The notes: generated by a model from the sequence alone, not told the origin. A stretch of DNA of 64,000 nt from IMGVR_UViG_3300046171_000252:62001-126000; one strand, 5' to 3'. Numbered from the stretch's first letter, positions 60,622 to 64,000 are shown. Numbers and translations are program-made.

Positions 60622-61001
60622 CCGAATTAAAAGACTGGCTCAACTCTATCAATCAAACAAAGAAGCATTTGATTGATGAAGACCCCTTGGTTGAAAAAGA
60701 ATATCCTCCTTATATTATCAACCGTTGTTTCTCCGGACATCTTGATGCAATTATGTTTGCAAACGAGATGAACAAGTATCATTTTCTTCCAAAGAAGATG
60801 CAGTATGATTTTATGCTAAATAGTCTGAGGAAAAAGAAGAGATTTTCTCCCTGGCTCCGAAAAGATAAAATCAAAGATCTTGATTATGTCAAACGTTATT
60901 ATGACTATAGTAATGAAAAGGCACAACATGCTTTGAAGATCCTAACAACAGAACAACTTAATTTTATTAAATCAAAATTTGATACTGGAGGAACAAGATG
61001 A
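60618..61001 (+). CDS. gp62: Clamp loader small subunit gp62
   Basis: YPPYIINRCFS, ANEMN, RKKKRFSPW. Confidence 0.92.
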   Translation: MTELKDWLNSINQTKKHLIDEDPLVEKEYPPYIINRCFSGHLDAIMFANEMNKYHFLPKKMQYDFMLNSLRKKKRFSPWLRKDKIKDLDYVKRYYDYSNEKAQHALKILTTEQLNFIKSKFDTGGTR

Positions 61002-61438
61002 GTGTGGTTCAAGAACCTATTGTGAAATGGTCGCCGGAGCAGATGGTTGAAGTGGTTCTTGGAGAACCTGATGACTTTCTCAAAGTAAGAGAAACACTAA
61101 CAAGAATTGGTGTTGCATCAAGAAAAGAAAAGAAGATTTATCAATCTTGTCATATTCTTCATAAACAAGGTCGTTATTATCTTGTGCATTTTAAAGAACT
61201 CTTTGCACTAGATGGTAAACATGCCAATATCACAGTTAATGATGTCCAACGACGTAATCGCATTGCTCAATTACTTGCTGATTGGGGTCTTATTAGCATC
61301 GTTAGTGCTGATAAAATACAAGATATTGCTCCATTGAATCAGATTAAGGTTCTTTCTTATAAAGATAAGCAAGACTGGATTCTTGAAACTAAGTATAATA
61401 TTGGGTCCAAAAAGAAAAAGGTTGAAGAAACCGAATAA
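60998..61438 (+). CDS. regA: Translational repressor RegA
   Basis: DDFLKVRETLTRIG, YQSCHILHKQGRYYLVHFKELF. Confidence 0.96.
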   Translation: MSVVQEPIVKWSPEQMVEVVLGEPDDFLKVRETLTRIGVASRKEKKIYQSCHILHKQGRYYLVHFKELFALDGKHANITVNDVQRRNRIAQLLADWGLISIVSADKIQDIAPLNQIKVLSYKDKQDWILETKYNIGSKKKKVEETE

Positions 61439-61445
61439 AAATCTA

Positions 61446-61468
61446 CGGGGTTCCTACCCCGCTTTTTT
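61446..61468 (+). terminator. Intrinsic terminator after regA
   Basis: cggggt-tcct-accccg followed by ctttttt. Confidence 0.8.
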
Positions 61469-61477
61469 ATGCTTTGT

Positions 61478-61485
61478 TATAAATA
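61478..61485 (+). promoter_or_regulatory. Late promoter TATAAATA for hsp20
   Basis: Exact consensus. Confidence 0.75.
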
Positions 61486-61489
61486 ATCA

Positions 61490-61543
61490 TGGATGCCTTC
61501 GGGGTCCACAAAACACAAACTCGCTTTTAAAGGAGCTACAATC
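61490..61543 (+). promoter_or_regulatory. ROSE-like RNA thermometer in the hsp20 5' UTR
   Basis: cUUCGg hairpin 61490-61508; UCGCU (61521-61525) pairs with SD AAGGAG (61530-61535), leaving a bulged G. Confidence 0.6.
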
Positions 61544-61978
61544 ATGGGAAACCTTGCACGGTATACTGCTGCGGACCTACCTGCGTTGATGGAACGCATA
61601 AATAGGAATAGCATAGGAATGGATGAATACTTCGATAGGTTGTTTAATCTCCACGAAACAACGAAGAATTATCCACCATTTAATCTAGTCACGGTCAGCG
61701 CAGTAGAATCACGACTAGAACTTGCACTTGCAGGATTTAGAAAAGCAGAAGTAAATGTCTACACACAAGACGGAAAACTCTTTGTCGAAGGACAAAAAGA
61801 GGACACCGAATCAGAAACGACTTATGTCCACAGAGGAATGGCTCAACGATCTTTCACCAGATCTTGGACACTGGCAGAGGATACGGAAGTTAGATCAGTT
61901 GAATTTGAGGATGGGTTGTTAAGTATTGTTCTGGGAAGAATTGTGCCCGAACATCATCAAAAGAAGGTCTGGTTTTGA
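61544..61978 (+). CDS. hsp20: Small heat-shock protein Hsp20
   Basis: YPPFNL, LELALAGF, YVHRGMAQRSF, DGLLSI; SD-supported ATG at 61544. Confidence 0.93.
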   Translation: MGNLARYTAADLPALMERINRNSIGMDEYFDRLFNLHETTKNYPPFNLVTVSAVESRLELALAGFRKAEVNVYTQDGKLFVEGQKEDTESETTYVHRGMAQRSFTRSWTLAEDTEVRSVEFEDGLLSIVLGRIVPEHHQKKVWF

Positions 61979-62001
61979 TACCCTAACTGATTTTTGCTGC
62001 G

Positions 62002-62047
62002 GTTGATACAGAAGTGTATCAACATGATACACTATACTCTATATAAT
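62002..62047 (+). promoter_or_regulatory. Overlapping inverted repeats of TGATACA plus TATAAT box
   Basis: gttgataca-gaag-tgtatcaac and agtgtatca-aca-tgatacact share the middle arm; TATAAT at 62042-62047. Confidence 0.55.
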
Positions 62048-62071
62048 TATGTAATCGATTAGGAGGTATTA

Positions 62072-62155
62072 ATGAACTTCACCACCACTGCCTTAGCAGC
62101 TGGAACTCTAATGACTATTTTTATTGGAGTTCCCATTACTACATTTGTTTCTTAG
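62072..62155 (+). CDS. Hydrophobic micropeptide, 27 aa (MNFTTTALAAGTLMTIFIGVPITTFVS)
   Basis: Perfect SD AGGAGG at 62061-62066; single TM-like segment. Confidence 0.6.
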   Translation: MNFTTTALAAGTLMTIFIGVPITTFVS

Positions 62156-62158
62156 CAC

Positions 62159-62233
62159 ATGGAAATCTTAGCAACCTTTGTCATTTTTGGCGCAGTAATG
62201 AGTGGAGCATTTGCACTCACCCCTAAAAAATAA
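62159..62233 (+). CDS. Hydrophobic micropeptide, 24 aa (MEILATFVIFGAVMSGAFALTPKK)
   Basis: Starts 3 nt after the previous stop; TM segment plus basic tail. Confidence 0.5.
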   Translation: MEILATFVIFGAVMSGAFALTPKK

Positions 62234-62268
62234 ATACTAAATAAAACTGAATATCGTCGTCGCAGATG

Positions 62269-62310
62269 GAGGGGTAACTGGCAAAATCCAGTTAATGCCC
62301 CTCTTTTTTT
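62269..62310 (+). terminator. Long bulged hairpin plus T7; terminator and possible sRNA 3' end
   Basis: gagggg/cccctc outer stem, taactgg/ccagtta inner stem, T run 62304-62310. Confidence 0.7.
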
Positions 62311-62341
62311 GTATCTAAATATCAACGTTAGTGAGAGGAGT

Positions 62342-62656
62342 ATGCTATCTACTCAGTATAGATTGAGATTAGAGTTCATCTGTAAATGTATTGCTAATGG
62401 TGAGGAAGTAAAATTAGATGACATGATTTGGGCAGAGAAACTAGCAAAGAGTCATACTACTGCTAGAGATTGGTTGCAAAAAGCACGGAGACAATCTGCT
62501 CAACAGATTGAAGAAGGTAGTGCAGATGATTTTCTGAATAGGATGGGATTAGGTGATCCCGACCCATCCAATCATAAAACGGGATTTACTGATGCTGATG
62601 ATATTAAAGATTGGTTTCATACTGACAAACCTGATGATTGGAGGCAACGTGATTAA
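62342..62656 (+). CDS. Conserved cyanophage hypothetical protein
   Basis: SD gaggag; MLSTQYRLRLEFICKCIANGEEV...DDWRQRD. Confidence 0.75.
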   Translation: MLSTQYRLRLEFICKCIANGEEVKLDDMIWAEKLAKSHTTARDWLQKARRQSAQQIEEGSADDFLNRMGLGDPDPSNHKTGFTDADDIKDWFHTDKPDDWRQRD

Positions 62657-62832
62657 TGGCAAGTGAATTTGATTACGTTGAAGCACCTACTGAAGGTGAA
62701 GTTGATAGGTGGGGATTTACAATTAAACCTTCTATTAGTGATAATGAATTGATTATTATATGTTTAAAAAACGCCCCTTGTGGATCAGACAAGAAACAAG
62801 TTGAACGATTGATAAAACATTATGAAGAATAA
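62656..62832 (+). CDS. Small hypothetical protein (58 aa)
   Basis: Hand translation MASEFDYVEAPTEGEVDRWGFTIKP...; TAATG coupling. Confidence 0.6.
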   Translation: MASEFDYVEAPTEGEVDRWGFTIKPSISDNELIIICLKNAPCGSDKKQVERLIKHYEE

Positions 62833-62965
62833 AGAATCAGATTATGTTTGTGTCACGACATGGAATGCCATGTTTGAATGTATGCGGTATCATTGGGTAC
62901 ATAAATCTGAAAAGGATCCTGTGCAATTCGTAAAAAATCTCAACCCAGATGAGGTAATTCTTTGA
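62822..62965 (+). CDS. Small hypothetical protein (47 aa)
   Basis: MKNKESDYVCVTTWNAMFECMRYHWVHK...; overlaps both neighbours. Confidence 0.5.
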   Translation: MKNKESDYVCVTTWNAMFECMRYHWVHKSEKDPVQFVKNLNPDEVIL

Positions 62966-63255
62966 AGAAACTATTCATAGTTAGTATTGGTGAGAATGAA
63001 TGTGTCACTCACGATGGTTATATTCAAATTGGTATCTTTAATCATTCTGTAGAAAAGCATCTAGAGTTAAATCCTACTATTGATTGGCAAGTAACTTATT
63101 GGATGCCAGATATCTGGGCAAATAGATATAAGAGAGTATCATTTCAACTTACTGAAAAGAAAAACGAAGGTTCACCTAGAACCGATAACGCAACAGACAG
63201 TCGTCCCAGAGATTTTCCAGATCAAGCGACTAATAGATTGGAAAGAACATTATGA
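62962..63255 (+). CDS. Hypothetical protein
   Basis: 97-aa ORF, TTG start overlapping the previous stop. Confidence 0.6.
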   Translation: MKKLFIVSIGENECVTHDGYIQIGIFNHSVEKHLELNPTIDWQVTYWMPDIWANRYKRVSFQLTEKKNEGSPRTDNATDSRPRDFPDQATNRLERTL

Positions 63256-63395
63256 AAATGTGGGAGACAAAATGCGTCGAGTGTGGTAAAATGGTTCCAG
63301 CGAATCAAGCACCTCAGATAGGGCACCAAGCACCTGATGGTAGTTGGACAAATTCGCTATGTAAACCTTGCTGGATAAAGAAGAACAATGGATAA
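63252..63395 (+). CDS. Small Zn-ribbon peptide (47 aa)
   Basis: CVEC...CKPC; ATGA coupling. Confidence 0.55.
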   Translation: MKMWETKCVECGKMVPANQAPQIGHQAPDGSWTNSLCKPCWIKKNNG

Positions 63396-63561
63396 AATTG
63401 ATACACAAGGCATGAGTCTTCCTGGTAAATCAAAAAAACCAAGTAGTTATGATCCTATGCCAGTAAAGAACCGTACAATCTTCACGCCAGAAGAACGTAT
63501 TGAGTTGAAGCAGATTATCAACGAAGCACTTGATGAGAGAGAAAAAAATGAAGCATTATAA
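63388..63561 (+). CDS. Small hypothetical protein (57 aa)
   Basis: MDKIDTQGMSLPG...ERIELKQIINEALDER; fills the gap. Confidence 0.55.
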   Translation: MDKIDTQGMSLPGKSKKPSSYDPMPVKNRTIFTPEERIELKQIINEALDEREKNEAL

Positions 63562-63721
63562 TAACTATTACGTCAAGTTTGACGATGATGAATTGCGACA
63601 GATCTTGAAAGAGATTAGTAACGAAGAAGTTAAAGTAAGAATAAGGAGTGCATTGGGAGAGACTGTTGATCCCATAGATAAGTTCCATGCAACTATCGCA
63701 TATTATAATAATGAAGTTTAA
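63548..63721 (+). CDS. Small hypothetical protein
   Basis: MKHYNNYYVKFDDDELRQIL... Confidence 0.55.
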   Translation: MKHYNNYYVKFDDDELRQILKEISNEEVKVRIRSALGETVDPIDKFHATIAYYNNEV

Positions 63722-63992
63722 AGCACTTGTATTTGTTCGTTTGAGGTCACAGGTTGATGACTCTCCTGGTAATGCTGTGAGAGATGCCTGTAAGCGATTG
63801 TCTGAGTTAGATATTAAAAAACTTAGATTGGGTAAAGTGATTGATGTTTGGTTGGAATCAGAGAGTAGAGAGTATGCTGAGAAGGAACTTGAAATGCTTT
63901 CTGATAGATTCCTTGCTAACACAGTTATGGAAGACTGGGACTATGAACTGACCGAGATTGAAAACTTTCCCAAAGGTATTGACAATGGATGA
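63711..63992 (+). CDS. purS: Phosphoribosylformylglycinamidine synthase subunit PurS
   Basis: V.LR..V.D..G.AV..A...L......LR.GK.I........A......LAN.VMED matches the PurS pattern. Confidence 0.8.
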   Translation: MKFKALVFVRLRSQVDDSPGNAVRDACKRLSELDIKKLRLGKVIDVWLESESREYAEKELEMLSDRFLANTVMEDWDYELTEIENFPKGIDNG

Positions 63993-64000
63993 TTTTAACG

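What the first reader, a model, noticed from the sequence alone, without database searches (positions are those of the whole stretch)
61976..62054. Interlocked TGATAC inverted repeats: dual operator or bistable hairpin
Seen: four TGATAC half-sites (61976, 62004, reverse 62016-62021, 62025). Two perfect 9-bp inverted repeats share the middle arm and are mutually exclusive as hairpins. If TATAAT (62042-62047) is a -10, the first palindrome is centred at -41.5 (class II activator position) and the second, TGTA-N9-TACA, covers the -35 region. Established: NtcA binds GTA-N8-TAC, one base shorter than seen here. Inference: a host-signal-responsive (possibly nitrogen-linked) activator/repressor switch, or an RNA switch in the hsp20 3' UTR.
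Basis: partly seen in the sequence, partly recalled or inferred. Interest (0 to 1): 0.65.

Follow-up and report, generated by a model that had tools for sequence, protein, structure and literature searches.

The report
Cyanophage micro-gene promoter palindrome
A 17-base perfect palindrome beside a promoter-like TATAAT box is kept almost letter for letter in more than a hundred marine cyanophages, in front of two unannotated tiny membrane-peptide genes. It is most likely a protein-binding control site, not the nitrogen (NtcA) switch or RNA switch first proposed.

Summary
Four TGATAC words, two perfect 9-bp inverted repeats sharing the middle arm, and TATAAT all lie where stated.

Comparison with relatives changes the picture. 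The conserved unit is only the downstream palindrome, TGTATCA-N3-TGATACA (62015-62031). In 127 distinct loci chosen solely by the downstream micro-ORF, the arms are 99% invariant and no base pair ever changes compensatorily. The centre and flanks vary freely (majority-base frequency about 0.56-0.62). A real terminator stem in the same loci does covary.

The palindrome lies 1-10 bp upstream of a TATAAT box. Behind it come a 27-aa and a 24-aa hydrophobic ORF, both unannotated.

- The cassette is a single-copy, moron/PeSL-like insert behind hsp20.
- It is absent from the closest isolate, S-SKS1, and sits elsewhere in S-RIM8.
- The exact palindrome was not found in 305 host-family genomes.

The upstream arm that makes the hairpins "interlocked" is exact in only 35% of loci, with 4- or 6-nt spacing. 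The first TGATAC is just the hsp20 stop region. Spacing is always GTA-N9-TAC, never NtcA's N8, and the site would centre at -22 to -31.

Best reading: an operator, probably a repressor site, on a -10-only promoter, possibly also attenuating hsp20 read-through. The binding factor and the transcription start are unknown.

The parts
61544..61978 (+). hsp20 (small heat-shock protein). This is the upstream neighbour. Its TGA stop (61976-61978) forms the first, non-conserved 'TGATAC'.
   Evidence: Pfam HSP20, E = 2e-13. Annotated Hsp20 in S-SKS1, S-SM2 and RN05-S. The stop-region word varies in relatives.
62002..62010 (+). Upstream auxiliary arm GTTGATACA. It acts as a third half-site in the same orientation as the right arm. 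Together with the middle arm it forms the window's first 9-bp hairpin.
   Evidence: Among 127 unbiased loci, TGATACA is exact in 45 (spacer 4 in 35, spacer 6 in 10), has 1 mismatch in 37 and 2 mismatches in 44. Only the terminal ACA, within a conserved ACAGA block upstream of the palindrome, is near-invariant.
62015..62031 (.). Core conserved palindrome TGTATCA-ACA-TGATACA, the functional unit. In this lineage only, it extends to 9-bp arms (62013-62033).
   Evidence: Majority-base frequency is 0.99 and 0.998 in the arms, 0.56 in the centre and 0.56-0.62 in the flanks. No alternative Watson-Crick pair appears at any of the 7 pairs in 127 loci. There is one copy per phage genome.
62033..62038 (+). 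TATACT, a possible second -10 box directly behind the palindrome. In a sub-lineage it is the only TATAAT.
   Evidence: 32 of 127 loci have an exact TATAAT 1 nt after the palindrome. Many loci have both boxes, as gTATAATcTATATAAT.
62040..62053 (+). TATATAATTATGTA block containing the sigma-70-type -10 hexamer TATAAT (62042-62047). It is itself a near-palindrome around AATT.
   Evidence: An exact TATAAT lies 8-10 nt after the palindrome in 77 of 127 loci. There is no conserved -35.
62062..62066 (+). Shine-Dalgarno GGAGG of micro-ORF1.
   Evidence: Read directly from the sequence. Conserved as GGAGG or GGAGGA before the ATG in relatives.
62072..62155 (+). Micro-ORF1, 27 aa: MNFTTTALAAGTLMTIFIGVPITTFVS. 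It is hydrophobic and unannotated.
   Evidence: 84 distinct 27-aa variants were collected. The consensus of the 32 aligned is MNFTxATLxxGTxMTLF...LP, with M1, T4, G11 and F17 invariant. No PHROG hit and no host homologue.
62159..62233 (+). Micro-ORF2, 24 aa: MEILATFVIFGAVMSGAFALTPKK. It has a hydrophobic helix and a basic tail.
   Evidence: Homologues (MEILAVIAIVGAAFGGAAALTKK) occur in two marine Synechococcus genomes at E of about 3e-8, without the palindrome.
62236..62310 (+). Conserved structured terminator that closes the cassette. Outer stem 62268-62274/62298-62303, inner hairpin ACTGG-CAAAAT-CCAG, then a T-run.
   Evidence: Fold of -23.7 kcal/mol, z = -3.2. The outer stem covaries while the inner hairpin and ATATCGTCG are invariant. 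Present within 450 nt of ORF1 in 104 of 122 loci.

Best explanation
The functional element is the 17-bp dyad TGTATCA-N3-TGATACA. It forms the upstream half of a small portable promoter module (dyad, -10 box TATAAT, Shine-Dalgarno) that drives a mobile cassette of one or two micro-ORFs encoding about 25-aa hydrophobic peptides.

The dyad is read sequence-specifically. Most likely it is double-stranded DNA bound by a symmetric dimeric protein. It covers the -35/spacer region of a -10-only promoter, centred at about -22 to -31, with a spacing to the -10 box that is not fixed. The most likely action is therefore repression by occlusion, which would set the time or condition at which host RNA polymerase can fire this promoter.

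The degenerate third half-site upstream (a perfect GTTGATACA in this window) would add cooperative binding in some lineages. On hsp20 read-through RNA from the late promoter, the same dyad can form a hairpin that may attenuate or end that transcript. This is a PeSL-like double use.

**Shown:** the anatomy, the extreme sequence conservation without covariation, the link to the -10 box and micro-ORFs, single copy and mobility, and that no exact copy was found in the host-family genomes searched.

**Inferred:** that the TATAAT is an active promoter, the position of the start, that a protein binds, and that it represses. The binding factor is unidentified.
For: 1. Loci were selected only by ORF1 codons. 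All 127 distinct upstream regions (72 distinct peptides, about 71% ORF1 nucleotide identity) carry the dyad. 121 of 130 are exact, the arms are 99% invariant, and the centre and flanks sit at about 0.56-0.62 majority-base frequency.
2. Internal control: in the same loci, the terminator's outer stem shows compensatory changes (AU 19, GC 11, GU 5; GC 26, AU 9). The dyad shows none. Structure alone therefore does not explain the invariance.
3. The centre triplets occur as reverse-complement pairs (CTA 68 and TAG 25; TGT 7 and ACA 6; CAG 4 and CTG 4). The element works in either orientation of its centre, as expected for a symmetric reader.
4. The dyad is always 1-10 bp upstream of a TATAAT and 34-41 nt from the ATG. 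The same module precedes other small hydrophobic ORFs (L014/L115, L084/L122).
5. In S-RIM8 the module sits in the hli-psbA region.
6. A second near-dyad in S-RIM8 and S-H35 lies 3 nt after another TATAAT, just before a hydrophobic ORF.
7. There is one copy per genome. There is none in S-SKS1, which lacks the cassette.
8. No exact copy occurs in 4 + 301 host-family genomes. The recurrent 1-mismatch hits are coding.
9. In an unrelated viral contig, the same AGTGTATCA-N3-TGATACACTAT dyad with TATAAT precedes a ribbon-helix-helix repressor gene. This shows that such a dyad can plausibly serve as an operator.
Against: - No transcription start, binding protein or expression data exist for the element. 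Metatranscriptome contigs cover the cassette only thinly and cannot show RNA ends.
- No candidate regulator was found. There is no RHH family hit in the phage, nothing DNA-binding among the neighbouring genes, and phyletic profiling gave only widespread genes of unknown function.
- If the factor is host-encoded, the lack of host sites is odd.
- The few arm variants seen (A>G at the innermost pair 6 times, C>T once) would keep G-U pairs in + strand RNA. An RNA reader is therefore not excluded.
- In some lineages the dyad is extended to a 12-bp stem with a following T-run. That looks like a plain intrinsic terminator.
Confidence: 0.5

Rival explanations
1. RNA-level element. The dyad works as a hairpin in the hsp20 read-through transcript, acting as a 3'-end, terminator, attenuator or processing site. 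Alternatively it works in an antisense RNA. Its sequence invariance comes from a sequence-specific RNA-binding protein or nuclease, not from a DNA-binding protein.
For: - It lies directly behind the hsp20 stop in most loci.
- The hairpins have -9 to -10 kcal/mol.
- 23 of 136 variants extend the stem to 11-13 bp (AAAAG...CTTTT), followed by T-runs, which makes them terminator-like.
- The observed arm substitutions keep G-U pairing on the + strand.
- One RNA-library contig ends at 62029 and two begin at 62037.
- PeSL stem-loops of T4-type phages are proven terminators (PMC2839356).
Against: - There are no compensatory changes in 127 loci, while a true terminator stem in the same loci covaries.
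- 96 of 136 variants have only a 7-bp A/T-rich stem with a 3-nt loop and no U-tract, this window included.
- The loop flips orientation freely.
- The element travels with the -10 box and micro-ORF rather than with hsp20, as in S-RIM8. Cassette-less phages end hsp20 at the other terminator.
- Contig ends are not RNA ends.
Confidence: 0.2
2. PeSL-type recombination module. The dyad plus promoter is mainly a conserved recombination substrate that lets the micro-ORF cassette move between genomes and positions. Transcription control would be secondary.
For: - The architecture is stop codon, stem-loop, -10 box, SD and ATG of an ORFan (against PMC2839356).
- The cassette is present or absent between genomes that are 94.6% identical, and in natural populations (joint 61974>62257).
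- It sits at a different locus in S-RIM8.
- The gene order ORF1/ORF2 is permuted.
- The neighbouring terminator carries a perfect TTGACA-N17-TATAAT, making it a true PeSL-like composite.
Against: - PeSLs act through several similar copies per genome. This dyad is single-copy in every genome checked.
- Recombination needs homology, not a 14-of-14 invariant dyad with variable flanks.
- There is no -35 box.
Confidence: 0.12
3. A host NtcA (or Crp-family) class II activator site makes the cassette nitrogen-responsive.
For: - The TGTA...TACA ends resemble NtcA half-sites.
- Cyanomyovirus genomes do carry predicted NtcA sites (PMC3037559).
- The promoter lacks a -35 box.
Against: - The spacing is N9 in all loci and never N8. 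The marine consensus is GTA-N8-TAC (PMC3037559).
- The inner bases are invariant.
- The conserved dyad centres at about -22 to -31, with a variable gap to the -10 box. This is incompatible with the fixed -41.5 geometry.
- No exact copy occurs in 305 host-family genomes.
Confidence: 0.03
4. Bistable RNA switch. The two mutually exclusive 9-bp hairpins toggle to control the downstream ORFs or hsp20.
For: In this window the two hairpins are perfect, exclusive and nearly isoenergetic.
Against: - The upstream arm is exact in only 35% of loci. It is spaced 4 or 6 nt away and is reduced to ..ACA in most.
- The 9-bp extension is lineage-specific: 17 of 136 variants extend the 7-bp core by the window's 2 bp, 23 by more and 96 not at all.
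- There is no Rfam match and no covariation.
Confidence: 0.04

Closest known systems
PeSL (promoter-early stem-loop) cassettes of T4-type phages (Arbiol et al. 2010, PMC2839356; Comeau et al. 2014, PMC4122927)
   Same: [quoted passage not shown]
- A stem-loop sits where the -35/spacer of a host-type promoter lies.
- Both are associated with insertion and deletion between close relatives and with relocation.
- Both occur in T4-like myoviruses.
   Different: - This element is single-copy per genome rather than many copies.
- Its arms are A/T-rich and invariant in sequence, rather than G/C-rich stems conserved only as structure.
- It has no -35 box.
- It is conserved across many divergent cyanophages rather than within a phage pair.
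Classical phage or plasmid repressor operators overlapping a promoter (for example ribbon-helix-helix operators such as Arc, Mnt, CopG)
   Same: - It is a perfect dyad of 7-bp half-sites about one helical turn apart (10 bp centre to centre).
- It has an extra half-site about 11 bp further upstream.
- It is placed over the core promoter.
- An identical dyad precedes an RHH_5 gene in the unrelated contig L076.
   Different: - No repressor gene is adjacent, and no RHH gene was found in this phage.
- Binding is not shown.
NtcA-activated (class II) cyanobacterial promoters, GTA-N8-TAC at -41.5
   Same: - The outer TGTA/TACA letters match.
- The -10-only promoter is similar.
- The host and phage setting is the same.
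   Different: - The spacer is N9 throughout.
- The inner bases are invariant.
- The position is about one helical turn too close to the -10 box and is variable.
- No copy was found in the host genomes searched.
Morons of tailed phages
   Same: It is a small accessory gene unit with its own promoter, closed by a terminator, inserted between two conserved genes and patchily distributed.
   Different: - It is carried in the same orientation inside a T4-type replication gene block.
- It has an unusually conserved dyad.
- Its cargo is two micro-peptides shorter than 30 aa.

Membership tests
NtcA binding site / NtcA-activated promoter | Dyad GTA-N8-TAC | tested here: not met
   GTA-N9-TAC in the window and in all 127 unbiased loci. 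The consensus comes from PMC3037559.
NtcA binding site / NtcA-activated promoter | Site centred near -41.5 relative to the start, at a fixed distance (about 22 nt) from the -10 box | tested here: not met
   The gap from dyad to TATAAT is 1, 8, 9 or 10 nt. This implies a centre of about -22 to -31 if the start is 7 nt after the -10 box. The start itself is not mapped.
NtcA binding site / NtcA-activated promoter | NtcA binds, stimulated by 2-oxoglutarate | not testable with these tools
   Needs EMSA or footprinting.
PeSL (promoter-early stem-loop) | Stem-loop embedded in or abutting a host-type promoter, between an upstream stop codon and the SD and ATG of a small ORF | tested here: met
   Definition from PMC2839356.
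PeSL (promoter-early stem-loop) | Near-consensus sigma-70 promoter with both -35 and -10 boxes | tested here: not met
   TATAAT is conserved, but the -35 position falls in the variable centre or arm of the dyad: TCAACA here, ATCACT or TCACTA elsewhere.
PeSL (promoter-early stem-loop) | Many similar copies per genome, concentrated in plastic regions | tested here: not met
   One exact copy in G000, S-RIM8, S-H35, RN05-S and S-SCSM2R, and none in S-SKS1.
PeSL (promoter-early stem-loop) | Associated with insertion, deletion or relocation of ORFans between close relatives | tested here: met
   The cassette is absent from S-SKS1, which is 94.6% identical over hsp20. It is relocated in S-RIM8. A cassette-less joint appears in environmental contigs.
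Intrinsic (Rho-independent) terminator | Stable G+C-rich stem followed by a U-tract | tested here: not met
   The window has A/T-rich 9-bp stems with no T-run and is not listed by the terminator scan. The feature is met only in the AAAAG...CTTTTTT lineages.
Structured regulatory RNA / riboswitch-like bistable element | Conserved alternative pairings supported by covariation, or a match to a known family | tested here: not met
   No Rfam match at E up to 5. No alternative pair types in 127 loci. The upstream arm is not conserved.
Repressor operator overlapping a promoter | Dyad symmetry with sequence-specific conservation of both half-sites, and overlap with core promoter elements | tested here: met
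   The overlap is inferred from the position relative to TATAAT.
Repressor operator overlapping a promoter | A cognate DNA-binding protein that binds and represses | not testable with these tools
   No candidate was found by family scans or phyletic profiling.

The most novel reading that the evidence does not exclude
The dyad is the operator of a still unidentified sequence-specific regulator. The regulator would be phage-encoded, or a host protein whose best site exists only on phages. It would gate a mobile micro-peptide cassette in marine T4-like cyanophages. These phages lack MotA/AsiA (PMC5780444), and I know of no dedicated promoter-specific regulator described for them. With the weaker sites seen at other -10 boxes (S-RIM8 95833), it would define a small phage regulon for membrane micro-proteins.
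Probability: 0.3. Interest if true: 0.65.

Novelty: new variant of a known kind. Interest (0 to 1): 0.45.

Why it matters
Gene control in marine T4-like cyanophages is described only in terms of early sigma-70-type promoters, late TATAAATA promoters and a few borrowed host sites (Pho box, NtcA).

This element is a 14-of-14 invariant dyad. It is single-copy, was not found in the host genomes searched, and is tied to unannotated micro-genes of 24-27 codons. That makes it a concrete handle for finding a sequence-specific regulator in these abundant ocean viruses.

It also flags two families of tiny membrane peptides that annotation pipelines miss. One of them is shared with some marine Synechococcus.

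The work further shows that the 'interlocked' design seen in one genome is a lineage-specific elaboration and not the conserved mechanism.

Tried and rejected
- **Dispersed motif in the phage.** Rejected. There are no other copies in the window or the genome with fewer than 2 mismatches.
- **Rfam families over 60900-62900.** Only a weak ROSE_3-like hit in the hsp20 leader, and nothing on the dyad.
- **Host regulon.** There is no exact site in 305 host-family genomes. The recurrent 1-mismatch hits lie inside a conserved ORF of about 211 aa. Sites with up to 2 mismatches number 18 against 4 for the control in five genomes, with no pattern.
- **Expression evidence.** Four RNA libraries were laid on 1,301 bases. 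All are assembled contigs, so no RNA ends can be read. The cassette is thinly covered and many strains lack it.
- **tblastn of the 27-aa ORF1 against the phage collection.** No hits, because the query is too short.
- One viral scan was wasted on a pattern one N too short.
- **ORF1 host homologues.** None.
- **RHH lead from contig L076.** No RHH_5, RHH_1 or similar protein in this phage.
- **Phyletic profiling** of three dyad-positive against three dyad-negative whole genomes.
  - It gave phrog_527, a DUF7212 protein and a probably spurious ORF. None is DNA-binding by family scan.
  - phrog_527 occurs in 347 phage records, so the lead was dropped.
  - S-SM2, used as a negative, has a degenerate module elsewhere, which further weakens that test.
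- **Doron et al. 2016** (Syn9 start-site map) is not held in the library.
- **Literature search for the motif words.** It returned only unrelated primer lists.
- **RegA idea.** The conserved UUAUGUAA after the -10 box resembles, from memory, the 3' part of the T4 RegA SELEX consensus. This was not pursued, because the block is replaced by TTTAGACC in the largest lineage and would lie upstream of the predicted start.
- **Not used.** The large representative protein search, structure prediction and complex prediction. Nothing in the claim rests on them.

Full report
**Setting**

The window is part of a complete 207.6-kb T4-like cyanomyovirus record. Its nearest isolate is Synechococcus phage S-SKS1, at 94.6% identity over hsp20.

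The local gene order runs as follows:
- gp44 clamp loader
- small ORFs
- Dam-like methylase
- gp62
- regA (60998-61438)
- hsp20 (61544-61978)
- the finding
- two micro-ORFs
- a structured terminator

**Observation**

- four TGATAC words
- two perfect 9-bp inverted repeats that share the middle arm
- TATAAT at 62042-62047

As RNA, the two hairpins have -9.8 and -9.1 kcal/mol and exclude each other. The arrangement is not chance. The dyad patterns have no other match with fewer than 2 mismatches in the window, and there is one exact copy in the whole genome.

**What is conserved**

S-SKS1 and S-SM2 go straight from the hsp20 stop to the structured terminator. They lack about 280 bp that this window has: the repeats, the TATAAT, and two tiny ORFs of 27 and 24 codons. 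RN05-S, S-B43 and S-SCSM2R are only 67-71% identical overall, yet they carry the same insert.

A pattern scan of viral contigs returned at least 119 loci. Nearly all were the same cassette.

To avoid circularity, I then selected loci only by codons of the downstream peptide. This gave 127 distinct upstream regions with 72 different peptides and about 71% ORF1 nucleotide identity.
- All of them carry TGTATCA-N3-TGATACA. In one search, 121 of 130 were exact.
- Majority-base frequency is 0.99 and 0.998 in the arms, against 0.56 in the centre and 0.56-0.62 in the flanks.
- None of the seven pairs ever shows another Watson-Crick type.

In the same loci, the outer stem of the terminator does covary: AU 19, GC 11, GU 5 at one pair, and GC 26, AU 9 at another. 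Structure-only constraint is therefore visible at this evolutionary depth. It is not what holds the dyad constant, so the sequence itself is being read.

The centre triplets come as reverse-complement pairs: CTA/TAG, TGT/ACA and CAG/CTG. This suggests small inversions between the arms and an orientation-blind reader.

**What is not conserved**

- The first TGATAC is the hsp20 stop region and varies.
- The upstream arm that creates the "interlock" is exact in 45 of 127 loci. It sits 4 or 6 nt away and otherwise decays to ..ACA.
- The 9-bp arm length is lineage-specific. 96 of 136 variants have just the 7-bp core, and 23 have an AAAAG...CTTTT extension.

**Relation to the promoter**

An exact TATAAT follows the dyad after 9 nt (58 loci), 1 nt (32), 10 nt (15) or 8 nt (4). 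The dyad-to-ATG distance stays at 34-41 nt. There is no conserved -35 box.

With a start about 7 nt after the -10 box, the dyad would centre at -22 to -31. That places it over the -35/spacer region, a position for occlusion rather than for class I or class II activation. From my own knowledge, -10-only promoters are the rule in marine picocyanobacteria, so no activator needs to be assumed.

The module is portable:
- It precedes other small hydrophobic ORFs in some contigs.
- In S-RIM8, S-H35 and S-B64 the whole cassette lies in the hli-psbA region, with the two micro-ORFs in the other order.
- S-RIM8 and S-H35 have a second near-dyad 3 nt after another TATAAT, just before a hydrophobic ORF. 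S-SM2 has a degenerate copy after a tRNA gene.
- Across seven whole phage genomes, sites with up to 2 mismatches number 20, against 3 for the reversed control.

**Who reads it**

This is unknown.
- Host genomes: there is no exact site in 4 marine Synechococcus genomes plus 301 genomes of the host family. The recurrent near-hits are coding. Relaxed matches show no regulon.
- Phage: no ribbon-helix-helix family hit. Nothing is informative among the neighbouring genes. Phyletic profiling gave only widespread genes of unknown function.
- A lead only: an unrelated viral contig has AGTGTATCA-N3-TGATACACTAT plus TATAAT, and an extra half-site, in front of an RHH_5 (CopG-like) gene. Half-sites one helical turn apart are typical of such operators.

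**RNA evidence**

Four marine RNA libraries hold parts of the stretch, but only as assembled contigs.
- hsp20 is well covered. In two studies its contigs begin at 61490, 5 nt after a T4-type late promoter TATAAATA (61478-61485).
- The cassette is covered thinly. One contig bridges hsp20 into ORF1, one ends at 62029 and two begin at 62037.
- Many strains lack the cassette (joint 61974>62257).
- None of this fixes a transcription start.

- NtcA is not supported. The spacing is N9 everywhere, against GTA-N8-TAC (PMC3037559). The inner bases are invariant, the position is wrong and variable, and no host sites were found.
- The bistable RNA switch is a property of this lineage only.
- The general idea of an operator at a promoter is supported.

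**Comparison with known systems**

The closest described kind is the PeSL of T4-type phages (PMC2839356, PMC4122927). The layout and the link to gene shuffling are the same. The differences are single copy, invariant A/T-rich arms and no -35 box.

The neighbouring terminator is a better PeSL. In most relatives its descending arm lies between a perfect TTGACA and TATAAT.

I therefore file the finding as a new variant of a known kind: a promoter/operator/stem-loop moron. The binding factor and the peptide function remain open.

**Housekeeping**

The reads tool was given 1,301 letters. No alternative genetic code was needed.

Noticed in passing
window 61478-61543: hsp20 is preceded by a terminator (61446-61461 plus a T-run) and a T4-type late promoter TATAAATA (61478-61485). 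Metatranscriptome contigs from two studies begin at 61490. The leader gives a weak, sub-threshold ROSE_3 thermometer-like hit at 61487-61549 (E = 0.1).
   Followed up: partly
window 62236-62323; alignment A3: The structured terminator behind the cassette is single-copy and highly conserved across cyanomyoviruses.
- ATATCGTCG and ACTGG-CAAAAT-CCAG are invariant, and the outer stem covaries.
- In most relatives it carries a perfect TTGACA-N17-TATAAT across its descending arm, making it a PeSL-like terminator plus early promoter for the genes towards gp43.
- This window instead has TTAATG...TAAATA.
- A preceding conserved CTAAATA could make it a small RNA.
   Followed up: partly
window 62072-62155 and 62159-62233: Two conserved micro-ORFs of 27 and 24 aa, both hydrophobic.
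- They are unannotated in every isolate record checked and absent from PHROGs.
- The second family, with a GAYxLTPK tail, has homologues in a few marine Synechococcus genomes (L333, L334). There it sits behind a conserved leader of about 130 nt with no Rfam match.
   Followed up: partly
S-RIM8 NC_020486.1 95833-95849 (also S-H35 135909-135925): A second near-dyad, TGTATCAGCGTGATACT, lies 3 nt after a TATAAT and 3 nt before the ATG of a hydrophobic ORF. It is a possible second target of the same reader.
   Followed up: partly
L076 1716-1961: An unrelated viral contig beside a TnpB-like gene has the same extended dyad with TATAAT, plus a further TGATACACTATTA half-site. All of this lies upstream of a 49-aa RHH_5/CopG-like gene.
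   Followed up: partly
G000:C1:183904-186166 (outside the window): The psbA and psbD matches each come in two pieces in separate frames or segments. This suggests an intron, an inserted element or a frameshift in these photosystem genes.
   Followed up: no
whole window: The hexamer TGATAC is over-represented: 71 occurrences against 40.5 +/- 6 expected, mostly on the + strand. This probably reflects codon or dipeptide usage rather than regulation.
   Followed up: no
window 62310-64000 versus L001 (S-SKS1): After the terminator this phage has a run of small ORFs (phrog_507, 1201, 1093, 1134, 4923, 1286). S-SKS1 instead has two hypothetical genes and the DNA polymerase, so the region is hyperplastic.
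   Followed up: no
window 62040-62053: TATATAATTATGTA is itself a near-palindrome around AATT. A CATAAT -10-like box therefore faces the opposite way and could start an antisense RNA through the dyad into hsp20.
   Followed up: no
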